Assembly (NCBI GenBank): GCA_011109175.1 | Contig: RDEW01000062.1 | Location: forward strand, 124,001-188,000 | Source of the DNA: Dicyema japonicum | Taxonomy: Eukaryota; Animalia; Dicyemida | Reading direction: 5' to 3' | Length of the DNA: 64,000 bases | Shown: piece by piece, positions 348 to 51,744 of the stretch | Layout of the letters: the number at the start of each line of letters is the position of its first letter | Numbering within the stretch: position 1 is the first letter of the stretch | Made by a program: the position numbers and the translations under genes | Notes under the pieces: generated by a model | What the model was told of the DNA's origin: nothing | Seen by the model: the letters and a program-made list of their open reading frames with translations, nothing else | The model's database searches: none

Positions 348-1534
348 ATGATTGTCAACTTGATTCTATTCTTTTTCTCCACTTGTGGCGAAAATGACTA
401 CCCAAGACATTGGTGATTATTTCAAGTGTTTATTGTTTTAGGTTATCAATGTCAGCGATTAAAGAAGATTATAAACCGGTCAACGACATTCTTTCATTGG
501 CAATTGAAATTAAGAACTACTGCAGTAAAGAGTATGGCCTTCAGTACAACCAAATTAAATTATGTCGTCAGAATCCTTCTCATATACGCGTTCTTGTAAA
601 AGCTGCTAAATTGGCTTTAAAAGAGTGCCGGCGAATTTTTGTAAATGAACGATGGCAGTGTGATCCAAGTCATTTTTCTAACTTTTCGAAAAAATCAAAT
701 TCAAAATATTCCCTATTCTCTTATGTTCTTAGTTACGGTTTAATATACACATTATTTTTAGCTAACAGAGAAACCGCGTTTTTATACGCTTTGTCTACTG
801 CAGCATTGCATCATGTACTAGCTGAAGAATGTAAAAATGGGAAGCTACCACGAGACTGTGGATGTTCTTTAGGCCCTCCTCCTGATTACATGGATAAGTG
901 GCAGTGGAAGGGATGTGGAGATAATATAGAATACGGAGAGGAATTTTCAAAGAGATTTACTCAAAATAAAGAAAATGTAGAGTATGATATTACTTCACAA
1001 CATAACAGTGCAGTCGGCGTTAAAGTATCAATATCCTTTTTAAAATATATTGATTATATTTTTAATCTTTAGGCTGTGAAAAAAATGGCAGAAATTGAAT
1101 GCACGTGCTACGATATGGAAGAAGGATGTGAAGCAAAAACCTGCTGGCAAAAGTTGTCTCAATTTAGTAAAGTGGCTGACTATATTCGAGAGTTATATAA
1201 CTCTGCTGTACAAACAACAGTGGTAGACGGTAAATTGAGAAATCAGTTCCCGACGGATACATTAATTGAAGATACTTTAGTTTATCTTGTCAGTTCTCCT
1301 AATTACTGTGATCGTTTTGAAGACTATGAAATCAGGGGGACACAGGGAAGAGAATGTAACCCAAGAAATGAATCTCAATATAATCTTCCCAGATGTGATG
1401 AATTGTGCTGTGGAAGAGGATTCGTCAGAAAGGAATTGATTAAAGCGGAAAATTGTAACTGTCGGTTCGTATGGTGTTGTCGTGTAGAATGTGACACGTG
1501 CTATAAGAAGCAAGTTATATACTATTGTCGGTAA
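348..1534 (+). CDS. WNT: Wnt ligand, most similar to Wnt9-type; multi-exon (introns at about 413-441 and 1025-1072, probably also 738-761)
   Basis: Hydrophobic N-terminus MIVNLILFFFSTC; motifs CRRIFVNERWQC, RETAFLYAL, CGC, WQWKGCGDN, KTCW, LVYLVSSPNYC, GTQGRECN, CCGRG, CNCRFVWCCRVEC; joining ORFs 410..1072 and 1076..1534 across GT-AG introns restores the frame. Confidence 0.95.
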
Positions 1535-1964
1535 TTTGATTGTAAAATACTAATTGATCTTAATAAAATAATTTTTGTTTGCTAAATTATTAAAGATATC
1601 GGTTATTACATTAGAGTAGAAAAAACCTGTTAACCAAGGTTAATTAATCGGAGGATCGATATGGTGAAGTACCTCTATTGCTGGGGATGTCTATTTATCA
1701 TTTCACTTCTTCTCATGATCTTAACAGGGGTGATGAATTTTGGATACGTCGGAAACTCTATGTTTTGAACGGATAAAGTGTCAAATACACAAGTATCTAG
1801 GTTCAAACTTCTCCCGTCCTGGGCGAGTGGTTGTCATTTCACACTCTTCAACAGAAAAACAGCTGTCTTTTCGGGTTTTTTTGCTTTGATGTCAAGTTGT
1901 GTCAAAAATATTTATTTTTGACATTTTTTTTTTTTATTACAAAATTTATTAACAATAAAATATT

Positions 1965-3126
1965 ATTTATTAACTATGGGGGAGAGCGGCTGCTGACATC
2001 ACGGAGTAAGCGTTTCCGCGAATAACTGCGATACCAATTCTTTGCCTCAGCCAGACAGCTTCCCGCACGTCTTTCTTGCGGTGGGGCCAATTTTCCCCCG
2101 ATTTCCTTTAGGAAAGAGGCTGTAATACTTCCAGCCGCACCAGACGTCTCGATTGCTACCGGTACAAAACGGTAGCGGTCTCCAATTTCGCCATATTTTT
2201 TTAATCTTGATTTTTCGGCCAGATCGGCTGCCGATCCAGCAGACTGCGCCGAGCTGAGCATCATCGAGTTCGAGAAAGAGATCCACAACAGTGCTAGTCC
2301 CATACGAGCGATTTTTCCCTCAGTGAACGGAAAGATAGTTAACCCATCCGGTCTTTTCCCATCTCCGCGGTCCAATCCCACAGGTTTCCAATACTGCCGG
2401 GAAGCCTGCCGCTTCAAGAGCTCGCAAGACAATGTTGTTCATAGCAGCATGGGGGTGCTCTGCCCGCACTCCTTTTGCACGAGAGCGCGGTGCAGCCCTT
2501 TTGGCATCGACGATCCCTTCACAGCGGACATTGGTGTTCGACGCAAACATCAGCTCCCAGGCGTTGTGCGATTCCAATCCGAATACAGTCATCGTCCAAT
2601 AGGGTCCCAGGGAGAAGACGGGAGTGCATCCAGCCACGCTCCGCTCCCATGGTTGGCGGCGGACACGAGGCATGCAAGACGATGCTGGTTGGCCTCAGAC
2701 TTTAGCACGTCGAAGATATTCTTGGAGTAATATCATCCCAGTCACGTTGCCTCGAAGGATCGTTCGGCATATCCAAACCAGTTTCATACCATTCGCAACG
2801 AGCTTAGTCGAAGACTTTTTCCCAAGAGAGTCGGTTGTAATACGTAGGATTTCTTGGACCAAAAGGCTTCCACTTGAGAGCGATGACACATATGCTGGAT
2901 AGGCGATCTCCAGCGCGACCTGAGAACCCGTTCCTCCGAGGCGTGTAGGAAGCTTGCATTGGTTCCAACTCGGCGCATCAAACTGGATGTTTAGAAGTAA
3001 TTCAGCTGATTTTCTCAATGTCCTATCCAGTGACAGGAGGATGTCACGATGTTTGAAGCAGGGAGAACATCGGAGAGCATATAAGTGTTTGGGCAAGCCG
3101 ATGCTATTCTTCAAAAGGAAGAACAA
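1965..3126 (-). mobile_element. CRE-like non-LTR retrotransposon, 5'-truncated and frameshifted (RT tail plus restriction-like endonuclease)
   Basis: Minus ORFs 2695..3126, 2320..2673 and 1974..2432 carry LPTRLGG, GLDRGDGKRPDGLTIFPF, KKYGEIG and FVPVAIETSG. Confidence 0.85.
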
Positions 3127-9509: not shown

Positions 9510-10116
9510 AATTAAGGTAAAACAGTTCCCGTGGTCGGAGTGATACGCTTCCTTTCCAAACATTATGCCCATCCATATCCGCCATTGTGGAGACCTCTTC
9601 ATTGGAATATATCTTTTTTCAAATGTTAGAAGGTGCTATGTGTCTTTAAGACTTGTGAATTACATGGTTCCTCTTAGTATTAGAACAAGGCACAGAACAT
9701 AATGGAATCCTTCGATCAGGTAATTTGGAAATAAAACCCACAACTAATCACGACTCGGACGAGAGCACTTTACCATTATACTATCAGCATTAGCCTTAAA
9801 TAATTCAGCCAACGCTCCAGAAATCCGACAGGTATATTCTGTGCAGAACTCGGAGGTAGACCTGACAAGAGAAAAAGTGATTCGTCTACTGGTTGTTAAG
9901 AAAGCACGGTGGGCATAGTGGAGAAGATGATTATCCAATCCTGTACAGATACGAATGTACATCTCTTGGGATTTTTTATTTTTTACTTTAATATTTAAAC
10001 TTGTAATTTTTTACTTCAATATTTAAACTATTCTAATTAAAAATAGTACAAACCAAATATAAAGATTCTTTATCAAATTAATTTCCGTTAAATAATATTA
10101 TCTAAGTTAACCTATC

Positions 10117-11529
10117 CTAAAATCCAAATAGAGGATTGTGCCTGCATATTGAAGGCCCATGCTCCGAATAATCTGATTTTGTATGGACTACTTTTCTAAA
10201 TTCATTCTGTAACAATTTTGCATAACATATACAGTGTAAGCCATCATAGAACAACCGAAGTAAACAGCATACATTTGCTTCGAATGTGCATTTACGACAA
10301 TTTCCATTGCTTTCCCCTGAAATATCAATATGTAAAAATCAACTCCTTGTTCTCTGGTGGCAAATATTTTTTTCAAATCTTGATCAACTCTACGGTGTAA
10401 ATTTGGATAACACGTTGAACCTCCACTAAATACAATGTTCTAAATTAAATATTTCAATCTCATGCACTTTGCACAATCCCCTGCGAACGTCGATAGGGCA
10501 ACTCAATATTGAAGAAAATATCAATTTATCCAATGAAGTGGTAAATTCAGGATTATAAATGTCCGGTTCAAAGAGAAGTTCCGGAGCGAGGAACCGTTCG
10601 TAAGACATATCGAATTCGAATGGCTTTTTTGAAGTTTTGTTAAATCCTTGATATTTTTTAATTATTTTATCCGGCTGACTTTCAAGTTTGGAAAACTCCA
10701 TACAAGTGCTCTTGCAAACATAGCAGTGTTGCTCCTTCAAACAATAAAAAAGAAAACTTTGACTGTTTTGGCTACGTCATACAGGCAATCGGAGGGTACA
10801 CCATTTTCTCTTTCTCTGATCAATTGCTGAGTGAACGCTGTCATTTCAGTTCCGGCAATTGGCAAATATTTCATTGCAGTTCCAATGGCGTAACAATCAC
10901 TCTAAATGTAAAACTAAAATTCTACAATCGGAATGATGTGAGTTAGTCCGTGTCCTGAATCAATAACGATTCCAGTTGTCGGCCTATCGTTGGTATTTTT
11001 ATTCGCCCACGAAGCGGTCAAGGCCATCATAGCCTGAGTGCCAATATACATTCCCTTTACTCCAAAATTTTCAAACATAATTTCAGCCAAAAATTCTCTG
11101 TTTTCTGGTGTGTTGAGTGGCGGTTCAGTCTTTATTTAATAAAAATATTTTTCTACAAGGAAAAACAAATGATTTGAAGGATCTACCCCGAGATATGAAT
11201 AAATTGAAGCACACATTAATTTTTCATACAAATTGTAGTCATTTATAATTCCGTGTTTCATGGGAGACTGAAACTTATCCAAACTTTAAACTTTTTGAGT
11301 TAATGAAGCATTTCCATAAATATCATCTCCAATGGCAAAATCAAGATCCTGAAGAACTTTGGGAACTGTCCCAACTTTTCCTTTTCCAGAAGATTCTTTA
11401 ATTCCAACGAATGAAGGAATGATATATTGCGGCAATTCATGTCCTGCAAACCCCATTTTAGTACGGCTAAACTCATATTTAATATTAATACCCAGTTCCA
11501 ACATCAATAATACAAGGAAGAGTATCCAT
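10117..11529 (-). CDS. ACTR3: Actin-related protein 3 (Arp2/3 complex), 7 micro-introns
   Basis: Complete spliced ORF: [76 protein letters not shown]; no frameshifts. Confidence 0.97.
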
Positions 11530-11728: not shown

Positions 11729-11810
11729 GGTTGCGGGAACTGGGATCAGCTAACTAGTTGACATTACTTTTGTCTTTTTTTCTCGGTGATCCCAGAGTTA
11801 ATAAATAAAC
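11729..11810 (+). mobile_element. 3' end of the dispersed 'GIT*' LINE-like family
   Basis: ctgggatcagctaac...tttgtctttttttctcggtgatcccagagttaataaataaa is near-identical to the reverse complement of 50150-50235. Confidence 0.6.
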
Positions 11811-11819
11811 GTGCACGGA

Positions 11820-12085
11820 CACTTTCTCAAATGAGAATTTGCTCAAATCATCGTTGCGCGTGGGTTCCGCAGTGAGCACTGCTGAATATTTGAAAAGGAG
11901 AAAGTACTGCGGCATTGCGGACAGGTTCGCTTTCCACTCGATCTCTGTTGAGACGTCTGCCGTTATTGGTCCGAGCACGTCTGAGTTTATCAAATTAATC
12001 GGGTGGCTTGCAGGACTGCGGAGGAGTGAGTGCAAAATATCTCTTCCAGAACATTAGGCTCGCGATCATAAGAGGTAATTGAGAG
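11820..12085 (+). mobile_element. CRE-like endonuclease 3' fragment
   Basis: ORF 11839..12057: AEYLKRRKY...FHSISVETSAVIGP. Confidence 0.7.
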
Positions 12086-38475: not shown

Positions 38476-40149
38476 GCAGAAGCAACTAAATTAGACGGGG
38501 AATAAGTATCAACACACGTCGCGTCCCAGATCAGGTTCGTCCGTTGGCGAATGGAAAAGTCGTCATCCCATCAGGGCGTTTTCCATCGTTTCGGGAAAGA
38601 CCAGCAGGTTCTAACAGGCAATGGTGTCCAGCAGAGGCAAGGGAATTCTTTAATGTCATGTTAAGACAGGAGTGCCTGGGGAAACGACCCGCACTCATCT
38701 TGCATGACAAGGGATGATAACCAAAAGGATCGATCCAACGTCCACAGCGGCATTTTCTTTCGGCACACAATTTAAGACCAAGACGAAGCGAGGTAGCTAT
38801 TCTCACAGCCTCATCATCCAACAGGTTTCCAATTTCGGCAGATGGATAAGCGTTCATCCAGGCCCCCGTCGAGTGACAACTGGCTGTTTTGAGGCAGGCA
38901 AGCCTTCTTACATCTTCCGTCTTTTCAAGGGACTCTTTCTTCTTTTCGAAGACACAAAACAAATAGGACTTTTGCTTATCACAATTGGCCGGAGCATTCA
39001 GGTACAAATTCATCCATTCATCCCAGGCTCCCGACGGCGTCAGCGGTACGTTTAGTCCGGAAGTAGAGTGAAGGACCGTATCCACTAAACGCCTTGACGA
39101 GCCGAACGAAGATAAATAGGCGCCCAAAGCAACGTCCGAAGGAAGAGAAAGACCCAAACCACCGCAGGCTACAGGGAGTGAGGCCTGTAACCATCCGAAA
39201 TCATCAAAACGAACATTAAGAATGGACCCCATCGTCGACCGGATATCCATATCAATTAACGATAGAAGGTCTTTTTCGGCGTAGCATGGGGATCCCCGTA
39301 GAATAAAAAGGAGTTTTGGGAGAAGGAGACAATTCTTCAGCATAAAAAAGGCGACATGACGGTCCAAAAAACTCATCCTGTCGGCATACTGACGTAAATT
39401 AGTCCTCTTGCCTTCCAATAACTCCCTCACCCGGTTTACCAAAATCCCACACCCAAGGAAGTCGAGAGAATCAATATGAGTCTCCCTAACCCCTGGGATG
39501 ATATCGCAGAGTTTTCTATGAAAAAGGTAGAATGAATCGGAACTCAAATTCAGATTAATTGCTTCGCACTTTTCATTGTTAAATTCCAGACCGATTTTTC
39601 CACACAAACTTGATCGACGCAACTTTGGAGAGAATATCATCGGGACTTCCACCGAGAATACAATCGTCCAGATACCAGACGTTTAGTAGAGTGCAACGGT
39701 CCTGGGCAATATGGTCGATAGACAAGGAAAATAGAAGAGGACCGAGTGGGTCCCCCTGTTGAACTCCGGATCCGGACGAAATAATTCCACTGCCAAAAAC
39801 AAGAGGGGATGGATCCGAATACGCGAGATATACAAAGGGATAAATCTGAGGAATCCTCCTCCTACAGGTATCAAGAACGGTGTCCCTTCTGACTGAATTG
39901 AAGGCATTCCGGAGGTCCAATTTGAATAAAAACTCTGTCCTGATCTGGGACGCGACGTGTGTTGATACTTATTCCCCGTCTAATTTGGTTGCTTCTGCTT
40001 CAGACCCAGGACATGCTTCAAAGCAGGCCGAGGAACGAAAGAGGAGGAAGTACCAGAGAATTTCGGAGGAGTATCTTTTTGTTCCATTCGCGGTGGAAAC
40101 GTCAGGAATCCTTGGCCCCCAAGCAGATGAGTTGGTTCGTAAAAAAAAA
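38476..40149. mobile_element. CRE-like retroelement copy with inverted 5' part (38476-39938, minus) and sense 3' part (39939-40149, plus), A9 tail and 7-bp TSD
   Basis: LDLRNAFN, GVQQGDPLGPLLFSL, WYLDD and DGKRPDG on minus; LIWDATCVDT..FVPFAVETSG on plus; tttaatg at both 38469-38475 and 40150-40156. Confidence 0.9.
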
Positions 40150-40439
40150 TTTAATGTGAAATACACAATTCTTTGTGTTCCTGAACTCTGTAATACGTGG
40201 TCCAAAAAATGATGATCGACCGAGTCAAAAGCTAATTTCACTTGGATCCAAGTCGAAGACGAGTTGTTCTCTTTCGTTGGTTCAAGTATTTGTTGATGAT
40301 GGCTTGTTCTTTCGCGCCTTGACACATTCTTCGGCTTCCCAGTTGATTATCACTTATCAAATCGTATGATTCAATAAATTCTAACTATTTTTTGTTCACA
40401 CATTTTGTCAATAATTTATGTACATTAAGCGTACAAGTG

Positions 40440-41360
40440 ATTGGTCTCACCTTCTTGGGTGAATCATATTCACTTTATGAATAAGGTACGTGATCCCAGT
40501 ATAGAACCAACTACCAAACTTGAAAATGTCGAAATTGACGGAAATACAGCAAGAATATTTATTGGAAAAAATTGACAAGAAACTGTTGAACTCTATTTTA
40601 TTTTAGTTTTTTGAAAGACATAGAAGTGAATTTTGCTGAATCCTCTGGATGTCAGTGCATGTAAATCACTCCCCGTAATCGAAGGAAGGCTGTGTCTGCT
40701 TCAGAATCGAAACATGTTTTTTGATTACTGAGAAACTAAGTGCGGACATTGTAAATCAGCAAAGAAGACCGTCGATCACCTTGCAACTAGGTGTGGGAGA
40801 ATGTTGAATATCTCCTATCTCAGGCGGCATAACGAAGTGATCAGATGTTTACACCTACGTCTCTGCCGTCAATATGGAATAAGAAAAAACTAAGAAACTG
40901 AAGACCTACTCAGTCCAATCCGTGGTCGCAAATGAATTTATGGAGATTCATGTAAACACTACAATCTGCAACAAATAACAAGCCCGATTTTTTTCAATAT
41001 TATTACTCTATTGAAATTGGGATCACTTCGCAAAACTGCCTCAAGTTCCACAAGTGTGACGTACTGGGGAACGAACTTGAGATTATCCATCGCGCAAAGG
41101 TGAAAATAATCTGTGGTCATTACGTGAGATGGGATTATCTCAAGATTCTTCAAGGCCTACCTGGATCCTCAAGATAAAAAAAACGGTGAAAGCATATATG
41201 CAAACGATAACACTGCGGAAGACTCTGGAGAGCATGGAGTATCGATGCCTGGTGAGAGAAAGATGGTATGGAATATCAACCTAGGGTACCTCTGAATGTC
41301 GGGTTTACGTCGACGTGAAAACATCTATACGGGCAATAGAGTTGGCTCCAAAAAATAAAC
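40440..41360 (+). mobile_element. R4/Dong-like non-LTR element, C-terminal part (CCHC knuckle plus restriction-like endonuclease)
   Basis: LLQNRN, CGHCKSAKKTVDHLATRCGRML..RRHNEVIRCLHL..YGI, IEIGITSQ, DVLGNEL. Confidence 0.8.
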
Positions 41361-50956: not shown

Positions 50957-51744
50957 ATGAAAACGGACTTTGAAGATATCCCTGATTACATGTCAGACGA
51001 AATTCTATCAAATTGGTAAAGAAATAGCTATATTTTAGTCAGATATTAAACCTGGACTTCTCACAAGAAATGGTAGAAAGAAATTGGACGATGTGAAGAA
51101 AACCATAAAATCAAATTTATCAAATAAACAGCTTCATCAATCAGTTGCTTCACTGGAAGACCAAAATCGTAAAGAAGGAATGAATCAGTCTCTTAATCCT
51201 TCAAACAAGGGATTCAAACTGTTGTGTAAAATGGGCTACAAGCCAGGAGAATCTGTAGGGAAAGGAAACGGAATTACCGAGCCTTTAAAATTCGAGCTAA
51301 AGGACGACCGAACAGGAGCAGGCCATAAACGTACAAAAGAACGGGAATTGCTTAATAAGATAGTCAAAAAAGGACAAATGGAAAAATCCTTCGTTTGCGA
51401 TTTTTCGGAAAAACGGCGAAAAACTAATTTAAACATGTTTCTGTGCAAAAATTTGCTGGACGCAAGAAAGGCCTGTGAAAATCTCGATTTAAATTCTGGG
51501 ATTGAATTTCCTCGAGAATCTTATTTTTGGCCTACCTATTCAGACGCAGATCAGATTGATGGATGCGACTCAGACGTTATGCGCACGATGTTGGATAATA
51601 TTGTGAGTTATCTACGTTCTGAATATTTTTATTGCTTCGTTTGTGGGATTAAATTTAATGGTAGTTGTTTTATTAATGTTCTTAGACTTTGAAGATATGG
51701 AAAACAACTGTCCAGGAGATTTACAAAATCATTCAGATGTATGA
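50957..51744 (+). CDS. GPATCH11: G-patch domain protein 11 (CCDC75)
   Basis: DYMSD, DIKPGL, NKGFKLLCKMGYKPGESVGK..GITEP, YLRSEYFYCFVCG, NCPG; first intron is 1 nt out of frame as assembled. Confidence 0.9.

What the first reader, a model, noticed from the sequence alone, without database searches (positions are those of the whole stretch)
1097..1149. Wnt ligand that has lost the palmitoleoylation serine (probably lipid-free, WntD-like convergence)
Seen: the hairpin-2 motif reads CTCYDMEEGCEAKTCW, whereas Wnts normally have C[KR]CHGxSGxC. The Ser position is Glu and HG is YD, while the cysteines, the WQWKGCGDN motif and the C-terminal RFVWCC finger are intact and the ORF is complete. Known: Porcupine acylates this Ser (Ser209 in Wnt3a); the lipid is needed for Wntless transport and Frizzled site-1 binding; Drosophila WntD lacks it and is secreted independently. 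Inference: an independently evolved soluble Wnt with an acidic thumb, possibly signalling without Porcupine/Wntless or through a non-Frizzled receptor in a reduced parasite.
Basis: partly seen in the sequence, partly recalled or inferred. Interest (0 to 1): 0.82.

Follow-up and report, generated by a model that had tools for sequence, protein, structure and literature searches.

The report
Dicyemid parasite Wnt without its lipid site
An intact, strongly conserved Wnt signalling gene of a dicyemid (a tiny parasite of octopus kidneys), probably the only Wnt in that genome, has lost the serine that carries the lipid almost all Wnts need. It is a rare natural candidate for a lipid-free Wnt, alongside Drosophila WntD.

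Summary
Window 348-1534 (+) holds a complete four-exon Wnt gene of 361 aa with a signal peptide and introns of 29, 24 and 48 nt. Both halves match Pfam wnt.

Its thumb reads CTCYDMEEGC where other Wnts have C-[KR]-C-H-G-x-S-G-x-C. The acylated Ser is Glu224 (GAA, 1118-1120).

The only close relative found is a dicyemid contaminant contig in the Octopus sinensis assembly. It shares two tiny introns at the same positions and also lacks the Ser (CDCLGKGGKC).

The two proteins are 59% identical, with dN about 0.3, saturated dS and an ML omega near 0.04. The six loop residues are 0/6 identical. A 20-residue block over the index finger is 100% identical.

Of 61 family-wide conserved columns the window protein keeps 53. 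Five of the eight it loses lie in the thumb tip.

So this is a functional Wnt whose acylation motif alone was released from constraint. It is most likely secreted lipid-free, as WntD is.

The "acidic thumb" is not conserved. Porcupine/Wntless loss and receptor use could not be tested. The subfamily is unresolved.

Published counts give Dicyema japonicum one Wnt and one Frizzled. This is a new variant of a known kind, of moderate to high interest.

The parts
348..412 (+). Exon 1: start codon and signal peptide (MIVNLILFFFSTCG...), ending in phase 2 (TG|G = Trp)
   Evidence: Read from sequence. The orthologue L001 9921-9970 has the same hydrophobic leader and the same ...HW split codon.
413..441 (+). 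Intron 1, 29 nt, GT..AG
   Evidence: Same position and phase as a 23-nt intron in L001 (9971-9993).
442..737 (+). Exon 2: N-terminal helical part of the Wnt domain, including RWQC (650-661), where the family has RWNC (an N-glycosylation site)
   Evidence: Pfam wnt 2.9e-31 on 443-1024. Family column N 92% is Q in both dicyemids.
738..761 (+). Intron 2, 24 nt, GT..AG, phase 1. It is in frame and free of stops, so it is invisible to ORF finders.
   Evidence: L001 has a 27-nt GT..AG at the same codon position with unrelated sequence (10266-10292). Removing it restores the family spacing LF-x8-RE.
762..1024 (+). Exon 3: ETAF...WQWKGCGDN (899-925)...HNSAVGVK
1025..1072 (+). Intron 3, 48 nt, GT..AG, ending in an in-frame TAG. 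It is absent from the orthologue.
   Evidence: The junction GVK|AVKK aligns with the continuous GIKVVKE of L001.
1073..1534 (+). Exon 4: thumb hairpin, linker and C-terminal domain. Stop codon at 1532-1534.
   Evidence: Pfam wnt 7e-40, profile positions 152-305 of 305. PDB hits Wnt5a 2e-27 and Wnt7a 2e-25.
1100..1147 (+). Thumb (hairpin 2) CTCYDMEEGCEAKTCW. The four Cys scaffold is kept but the WNT motif is lost.
1118..1120 (+). Codon GAA = Glu224 at the position of the palmitoleoylated Ser (Ser209 of Wnt3a)
   Evidence: Alignments; coordinates.
1442..1501 (+). Index finger block KAENCNCRFVWCCRVECDTC, 20/20 identical between the two dicyemid species. This is the Frizzled-CRD site-2 hairpin in solved complexes.
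   Evidence: Pairwise alignment. The role of this hairpin comes from the XWnt8-Fz8 CRD structure 4F0A (my own knowledge).
1562..1567 (+). AATAAA, candidate polyadenylation signal 28 nt after the stop
   Evidence: sequence only; not validated.

Best explanation
This is the functional Wnt ligand gene of a dicyemid mesozoan, probably Dicyema japonicum and probably its only Wnt.

The protein keeps the signal peptide, all conserved cysteines, the two-domain Wnt fold and a perfectly conserved index finger. The tip of the thumb hairpin has lost the Porcupine acceptor Ser (now Glu) and the surrounding C-[KR]-C-H-G-x-S-G-x-C motif, and that tip now drifts freely between species.

Most likely the protein is not palmitoleoylated. 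It would leave the cell by the default secretory route without needing Porcupine or Wntless, as Drosophila WntD does. It would engage its receptor through protein contacts, chiefly the index finger (site 2), rather than by inserting a lipid into the Frizzled CRD groove.

Shown here: gene structure, loss of the motif, its sharing by two species, purifying selection, and the fold. Inferred: absence of the lipid, the secretion route, and the receptor mode.
For: - **Wnt identity.** Pfam wnt matches both halves. Solved Wnt5a, 7a, 3a and 8 align end to end, with the thumb in register and Glu on the acyl Ser.
- **Orthologue.** P0001/L001 shares introns 1 and 2 at identical positions and phases (23 and 27 nt against 29 and 24 nt). 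Its thumb is CDCLGKGGKC, with no Ser or Thr in the loop.
- **Selection.** Identity is 205/348 = 59%. dN is 0.30-0.33, dS is saturated, and ML omega is 0.04. Of 205 identical residues, 128 use different codons.
- **Localised loss.** Of 61 family columns conserved at 85% or more, the window keeps 53. Five of the eight lost columns (H, G, S, G, S) are the thumb tip and none is a Cys. By my hypergeometric arithmetic on those counts, p is about 1e-5.
- **Contrast within the protein.** The loop is 0/6 identical between the species. The index finger block is 20/20 identical.
- **Fold.** The AF2 model of the orthologue has pLDDT 88.4 and pTM 0.86, with the thumb a confident hairpin. Foldseek's top hits are Wnt3, Wnt7a and XWnt8, with target-normalised TM 0.75-0.82.
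- **Family census.** S 125, T 5, C 2, F 1 of 133.
- **Literature.** The WNT motif is present in all 19 human WNTs (PMC12371475). WntD naturally lacks the site, carries no lipid, and is secreted without Porcupine or Wntless (PMC2427328, PMC10112924). D. japonicum has 1 wnt-domain and 1 Frizzled-domain gene (PMC6736024, table S6).
Against: - There is no biochemical evidence on lipidation.
- There is no transcript evidence. The window's ORF products are not in the public protein or contig collections.
- Presence or absence of Porcupine, Wntless and Notum in this genome could not be checked.
- Only two species are available, so per-site selection in the loop cannot be measured. The loop could be under species-specific selection rather than none.
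- Thr219 in the window's C-T-C is a hydroxyl residue near the tip, but it is Asp in the orthologue.
- The identification of the window as D. japonicum, and hence 'sole Wnt', is an inference.
Confidence: 0.7

Rival explanations
1. The protein is functional and lipid-free, but it is not a classical Frizzled agonist. It could act as an antagonist or feedback inhibitor (as WntD does for Dorsal/Toll), or through another receptor, within a rewired or vestigial dicyemid pathway.
For: The thumb supplies site 1 of the Wnt-Frizzled interface, and its tip is unconstrained. Unchecked notes on the same genome report a Frizzled without the KTxxxW Dishevelled-binding motif and a stripped-down Dishevelled. 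The published Pfam count gives 0 Dishevelled-specific domains.
Against: The index finger that binds the Frizzled CRD at site 2 is 100% conserved over 20 residues, and one Frizzled gene is retained. Nothing here identifies another receptor.
Confidence: 0.15
2. The Wnt is still acylated, at another residue or by another enzyme, so it remains a lipidated ligand that depends on Wntless.
For: The window has Thr219 two residues before the loop. In 5 of 133 representatives the canonical position is Thr, so hydroxyl residues other than Ser do occur at the site.
Against: No Ser or Thr is conserved in or beside the loop: CTCYDMEEGC against CDCLGKGGKC. Beyond the acceptor Ser, the window fails the WNT motif at K/R, H and both G, and the orthologue fails it at K/R, H and the [LIVMT] position. 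If the loop carried a modification it would not be 0/6 identical between species.
Confidence: 0.07
3. The gene is a decaying relic that evolves neutrally after collapse of Wnt signalling in a roughly 30-cell animal.
For: Dicyemids have lost many developmental genes and evolve fast (PMC6736024). The branch leading to the pair is about 2.5 substitutions per site.
Against: The ORFs are intact in two species whose synonymous sites are saturated. ML omega is 0.04, all conserved Cys are kept, and 51 of 61 family-conserved columns are kept in both species.
Confidence: 0.04
4. The odd thumb is an artefact of assembly, sequencing or gene modelling, and a canonical thumb exon exists elsewhere.
For: Tiny in-frame introns do mislead ORF-based reading here. 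Intron 2 is read through in the NCBI model of the orthologue.
Against: The thumb lies inside a continuous 459-nt exon with canonical Cys spacing. No other Wnt-like exon exists in the 64 kb. An independent assembly of another species shows the same loss.
Confidence: 0.02

Closest known systems
Drosophila WntD (Wnt inhibitor of Dorsal; PDB 4KRR)
   Same: A genuine Wnt-fold protein that naturally lacks the acyl-acceptor Ser in the thumb. For WntD, absence of lipid and secretion independent of Porcupine and Wntless have been shown experimentally (PMC2427328, PMC10112924).
   Different: WntD is one of seven fly Wnts, and the other six remain lipidated. The dicyemid gene is apparently the only Wnt in its genome.

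The dicyemid protein keeps a full-length thumb scaffold and C-terminal domain. It matches 4KRR only weakly (3.7e-5, Foldseek rank 10).

Common descent of the loss is implausible on taxonomy, because all sampled Wnt8 representatives keep the Ser. My trees cannot formally exclude a Wnt8 affinity (AU p 0.088).
Canonical lipidated Wnts (Wnt5a, Wnt7a, Wnt3/3a, Wnt8; PDB 9Z67, 8TZO, 6AHY, 7DRT, 4F0A)
   Same: About 30-35% identity over the full length, all conserved cysteines, the same two-domain fold, and the WxWGGC-like, CCGRG and C-x-C-x-F-x-W-C-C motifs.
   Different: The WNT motif C-[KR]-C-H-G-[LIVMT]-S-G-x-C is CTCYDMEEGC. The RWNC glycosylation Asn is Gln. The gene belongs to none of the 12 subfamily clades recovered.
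Other database Wnts lacking Ser/Thr at the site (a Glandiceps talaboti tandem-Wnt protein, P0005, CRCHGFKGC; a Mytilus trossulus protein, P0127, CVCPGINKSC; P0053 and P0086 with Cys; P0149 with Phe)
   Same: They show that natural loss of the acceptor Ser recurs at low frequency, roughly 3-4% of the cluster representatives sampled.
   Different: The two whose source is named, a hemichordate and a mussel, belong to groups that generally keep many Wnts. Most retain the C-H-G triplet. None has been checked for being a real expressed gene. None is related to the dicyemid pair.

Membership tests
Wnt family (Pfam PF00110) | Significant match to the family profile over the whole domain | tested here: met
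   Exon 2 region scores 109.5 bits (profile positions 4-150) and the last exon 137.9 bits (152-305 of 305), against a cut-off of 20.3.
Wnt family (Pfam PF00110) | Conserved cysteine framework (22-24 Cys) | tested here: met
   There are 24 Cys outside the predicted signal peptide. None of the 8 deviations from family columns conserved at 85% or more is a Cys.
Wnt family (Pfam PF00110) | Two-domain fold: saposin-like N-terminal domain with thumb hairpin, plus a cystine-knot-like C-terminal domain with index finger | tested here: met
   Tested on the orthologue P0001. AF2 gives pLDDT 88.4 and pTM 0.86. Foldseek matches Wnt3, Wnt7a and XWnt8 at E 1e-21. The window protein itself could not be submitted spliced.
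Wnt family (Pfam PF00110) | N-terminal signal peptide | tested here: met
   A hydrophobic leader lies in a separate exon in both species. This was judged by inspection only; no predictor was run.
Lipidated Wnts (PROSITE-type WNT motif C-[KR]-C-H-G-[LIVMT]-S-G-x-C) | Acceptor Ser (or Thr) at the thumb tip within the motif | tested here: not met
   CTCYDMEEGC has Glu at the Ser column and keeps only one (Met) of the six specified non-Cys positions. The orthologue has Gly at the Ser column. Motif as quoted in PMC12371475.
Lipid-free, Porcupine/Wntless-independent Wnts (WntD type, a functional class) | No acyl acceptor in the thumb | tested here: met
Lipid-free, Porcupine/Wntless-independent Wnts (WntD type, a functional class) | Demonstrated absence of lipid, and secretion without Porcupine or Wntless | not testable with these tools
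   This needs expression and labelling assays. The genome outside this window could not be searched for PORCN or WLS.
Wnt8/WntD subfamily (orthology with WntD) | Falls inside the Wnt8 clade | tested here: inconclusive
   The Wnt8 clade is recovered without the dicyemid pair. Forcing them together costs 7.8 lnL, with AU p 0.088, which is not a rejection.
Any named Wnt subfamily (Wnt1-11, 16, A) | Supported placement inside one subfamily clade | tested here: inconclusive
   Placement changes from tree to tree: with long-branch sponge Wnts, weakly sister to Wnt9 (SH-aLRT 75), or at the base of Wnt5. Best BLAST hits mix Wnt5 and Wnt16.

The most novel reading that the evidence does not exclude
Dicyemids as a lineage have abandoned Wnt lipidation altogether. 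Their single Wnt is non-acylatable. Porcupine, Wntless and Notum are dispensable or lost. The ligand signals to a co-diverged Frizzled/Dishevelled pair through the index finger alone. That would be the first animal group whose entire Wnt signalling runs on a lipid-free ligand, and a natural test of whether the lipid is intrinsically required for Wnt-Frizzled activation.
Probability: 0.4. Interest if true: 0.8.

Novelty: new variant of a known kind. Interest (0 to 1): 0.62.

Why it matters
The palmitoleate on the thumb Ser is treated as near-universal and essential for Wnt secretion (through Wntless) and for binding Frizzled at site 1. WntD is the standard lone exception.

Here an independent lineage shows the same loss in what seems to be its only Wnt. 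The rest of the protein, and especially the index finger, stays under strong constraint. This gives three things:
- A second, evolutionarily separate system in which to ask how a Wnt can be secreted and can signal without lipid.
- A prediction that can be checked in the genome: loss or divergence of Porcupine, Wntless, Notum and the CRD lipid groove.
- A marker for how far developmental signalling can be stripped down in a roughly 30-cell animal.

It also shows that Ser-less Wnts are scattered at low frequency in public data, and that the O. sinensis 'Wnt-1-like' protein comes from a parasite.

Tried and rejected
1. **A 93-nt intron 2 (669-761).** Rejected. The orthologue conserves SLFSY[VI]L.Y, which is encoded inside that stretch. 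A 24-nt intron (738-761) at the position of the orthologue's 27-nt intron fits instead.

2. **P0005 (323 bits) as a close relative.** Rejected. It is a hemichordate protein with two tandem Wnt domains, so it is scored twice.

3. **CNCRFVWCCRVEC as a subfamily marker.** The five short hits share it, but it occurs in the Wnt8, Wnt16 and Wnt6 clades, in other representatives, and in metagenome-derived fragments. The word-based search selects for it.

4. **Subfamily assignment by three ML trees and an AU test.** The result is unstable, so the gene is left as an orphan. The Wnt9 AU test did not finish.

5. **Exact look-ups of the window's ORF products in public assemblies.** I hoped for transcript or second-assembly evidence. 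Nothing is on record.

6. **A first profile alignment (A1).** It misaligned a fragment tail, so I rebuilt it as A2 before the library search.

7. **Earlier scan notes and the literature for Porcupine, Wntless, beta-catenin, LRP, Ror, Ryk and similar in this genome.** Nothing found. This says nothing about whether those genes are present.

8. **'Acidic thumb' as a selected feature.** Rejected, because the orthologue's loop is basic and Gly-rich.

9. **Organism names for P0053, P0086 and P0149.** Only assembly accessions were returned for P0053 and P0149, and P0086 is not on record.

Full report
**What is at the coordinates**

It lies in the last exon of a eukaryotic Wnt gene.

The gene model has four exons, 348-412, 442-737, 762-1024 and 1073-1534, separated by GT..AG introns of 29, 24 and 48 nt. 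The product is 361 aa. It has a hydrophobic leader (MIVNLILFFFSTCG) and 24 further cysteines. An AATAAA lies 28 nt after the stop.

Pfam wnt (PF00110) matches the first half at 2.9e-31 (profile positions 4-150) and the last exon at 7e-40 (positions 152-305 of 305). tblastn with eight Wnts from different subfamilies finds only this locus in the 64 kb, so there is no alternative thumb exon.

**The serine is really missing**

HMMER alignments to the solved structures of Wnt5a, Wnt7a and Wnt3a align the region without gaps. CKCHGVSGSC of those proteins falls on CTCYDMEEGC.

The acyl acceptor (Ser209 of Wnt3a) is Glu224, codon GAA at 1118-1120. His-Gly is Tyr-Asp, and the following Gly-Ser is Glu-Gly.

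Measured against the PROSITE-type WNT motif C-[KR]-C-H-G-[LIVMT]-S-G-x-C, which is present in all 19 human WNTs (PMC12371475), only the three Cys and the Met survive. The Cys spacing is canonical. The change needs several base substitutions, so a read error is not an explanation.

**Which organism**

- Introns of 24-48 nt.
- About 36% GC.
- Abundant retroelement fragments.
- The single close relative in 5.8 billion proteins is labelled 'Wnt-1-like [Octopus sinensis]' (P0001, 55% identity).

Together these point to a dicyemid, the kidney parasites of cephalopods.

The O. sinensis contig (VCDQ01005863.1, fetched as L001) carries introns of 23 and 27 nt at exactly the positions and phases of window introns 1 and 2. 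It also shares transposon families with the window. It is therefore dicyemid contamination, not an octopus gene.

The published D. japonicum genome has 36.7% GC, a mean intron of 38 bp and 49% repeats. It has exactly one wnt-domain gene, one Frizzled-domain gene and no Dishevelled-specific domain (PMC6736024, text and table S6). An earlier agent of this scan also called this genome dicyemid.

That the window is D. japonicum itself, and that this is therefore 'the' single Wnt, is my inference.

**The loss is shared, local and set in a constrained protein**

After correcting the NCBI model (adding the signal-peptide exon and removing the read-through 27-nt intron), the orthologue is 349 aa and 59% identical, 205 of 348 aligned positions. 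Its thumb is CDCLGKGGKC. The Ser column is Gly, and the loop has no Ser or Thr.

Between the species, dN is 0.30-0.33 and dS is saturated, so NG86 and YN00 fail. The ML estimate is dS 7.4 and omega 0.04. Of 205 identical residues, 128 use different codons. The gene is thus under strong purifying selection across a deep split.

Against a MAFFT alignment of 133 Wnt cluster representatives, the window protein keeps the consensus in 53 of the 61 columns that are at least 85% conserved. Of its eight deviations, five are the thumb-tip columns H, G, S, G and S. The other three are the Asn of RWNC (Gln in both species), a Leu to Ile change, and a Gly to Glu change. No Cys is affected.

By my hypergeometric arithmetic on those counts, the chance that all five loop columns fall among eight deviations out of 61 is about 1e-5.

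The six loop residues are 0/6 identical between the two dicyemids: YDMEEG (net -3) against LGKGGK (net +2). The flanking CEAKTCWQKL is identical. A 20-residue block over the index finger, KAENCNCRFVWCCRVECDTC, is also identical.

So the hairpin scaffold is kept and its tip is released from constraint, or at least from any shared constraint. There is no conserved 'acidic thumb'.

**Fold**

I ran AlphaFold2 on the orthologue with a 95-row alignment, because the window protein could only be supplied in pieces. It gives pLDDT 88.4 and pTM 0.86. The thumb is a confident beta-hairpin (strands 193-199 and 207-213) and the index finger is long.

Foldseek's only significant PDB hits are Wnt3, Wnt7a, XWnt8, Wnt8a and Wnt3a (E 1e-21 to 1e-16, target-normalised TM 0.68-0.82), followed by the WntD N-terminal domain at 8e-10.

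**How rare this is**

In the 133 representatives the acyl column is S 125, T 5, C 2 and F 1.

Two longer proteins also lack the Ser. One is a Glandiceps talaboti protein with two tandem Wnt domains (CRCHGFKGC). The other is a Mytilus trossulus protein (CVCPGINKSC).

Ser-less Wnts therefore occur at a few percent of clusters. None of these other sequences was validated as a real gene. The two whose organism is named come from a hemichordate and a mussel, groups that generally keep many Wnts.

The literature held here treats WntD as the exception. It has no lipid, and its secretion is independent of Porcupine and Wntless (PMC2427328; PMC10112924). No paper in the library mentions the dicyemid Wnt's thumb.

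**Phylogeny**

All twelve sampled subfamilies are recovered as clades. The dicyemid pair is a 100%-supported clade on a stem of about 2.5 substitutions per site, and it lies outside all twelve. Its attachment moves from tree to tree:
- with long-branch sponge Wnts when those are included;
- weakly sister to Wnt9 in the quick tree (SH-aLRT 75);
- at the base of Wnt5 in the careful tree.

Forcing the pair into Wnt8, the subfamily of WntD, costs 7.8 lnL and is not rejected (AU p 0.088). The subfamily is unresolved.

Convergence with WntD follows from taxonomy, since all sampled Wnt8 representatives keep the Ser. It does not follow from the tree.

**Mechanism**

Shown:
- a complete, selected Wnt;
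- no acceptor Ser or Thr conserved in the thumb;
- an unconstrained tip;
- a conserved finger.

Inferred from what is known of Porcupine, Wntless and the XWnt8-Fz8 CRD complex:
- the protein is not palmitoleoylated;
- it does not need Porcupine or Wntless to leave the cell;
- it is probably more soluble than ordinary Wnts;
- it binds its receptor mainly through the index finger (site 2) and protein contacts.

I put this at about 0.7. The main alternative (0.15) is that it is functional but acts as an antagonist or through another receptor in a rewired pathway. Unchecked scan notes on a Frizzled without KTxxxW and a stripped-down Dishevelled in the same genome hint that way. Residual acylation elsewhere, neutral decay and artefact are each unlikely.

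**What could not be done**

- Only this window of the genome is readable, so PORCN, WLS, Notum and the Frizzled CRD could not be examined.
- No transcript evidence was reachable.
- The spliced window protein could not be submitted by reference, so whole-protein searches and the fold used its exons or its orthologue.

**Verdict**

This is a new, independent and lineage-wide variant of a known rarity, the non-acylatable Wnt. It is made more interesting by apparently being the only Wnt of its genome.

Noticed in passing
L001 (O. sinensis assembly GCA_006345805.1, contig VCDQ01005863.1, 522 kb), gene at 9921-11020: The NCBI protein 'Wnt-1-like [Octopus sinensis]' sits on a contig with 23- and 27-nt introns and with transposon families shared with this window. 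It is almost certainly dicyemid contamination of the octopus assembly. The NCBI model also misses the signal-peptide exon and reads through a 27-nt intron.
   Followed up: partly
window 1958-3126 (- strand); also about 11800-12080 and 39900-41200: GC-richer repeat or retroelement fragments have translated similarity to L001 5850-6190 and 16900-18900. The ORFs have no Pfam match. This agrees with the repeat-rich dicyemid genome.
   Followed up: partly
window 650-661 (RWQC): The Asn of the near-universal RWNC N-glycosylation site (92% of the family) is Gln in both dicyemid Wnts. N-x-S/T sites remain at N102 (window only) and N307 (NES, conserved in both).
   Followed up: partly
P0005 (XP_077998206.1, Glandiceps talaboti); P0127 (XP_063447148.1, Mytilus trossulus); P0053, P0086, P0149: Other database Wnts lack Ser/Thr at the acylation column. 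One is a hemichordate protein with two tandem Wnt domains and a shortened CRCHGFKGC thumb. Natural Ser-less Wnts may be more widespread than the 'WntD only' view suggests. None was validated.
   Followed up: partly
window 51084-51692 (+): An ORF with a G-patch domain (4e-12) plus DUF4187, which looks like an ordinary nuclear RNA-processing gene. Most other long ORFs in the window have no Pfam match.
   Followed up: no
window 738-761 and L001 10266-10292: Both introns are multiples of three (24 and 27 nt) and free of stops, so ORF-based reading inserts 8-9 spurious residues. This is a general trap for annotating dicyemid genes.
   Followed up: yes
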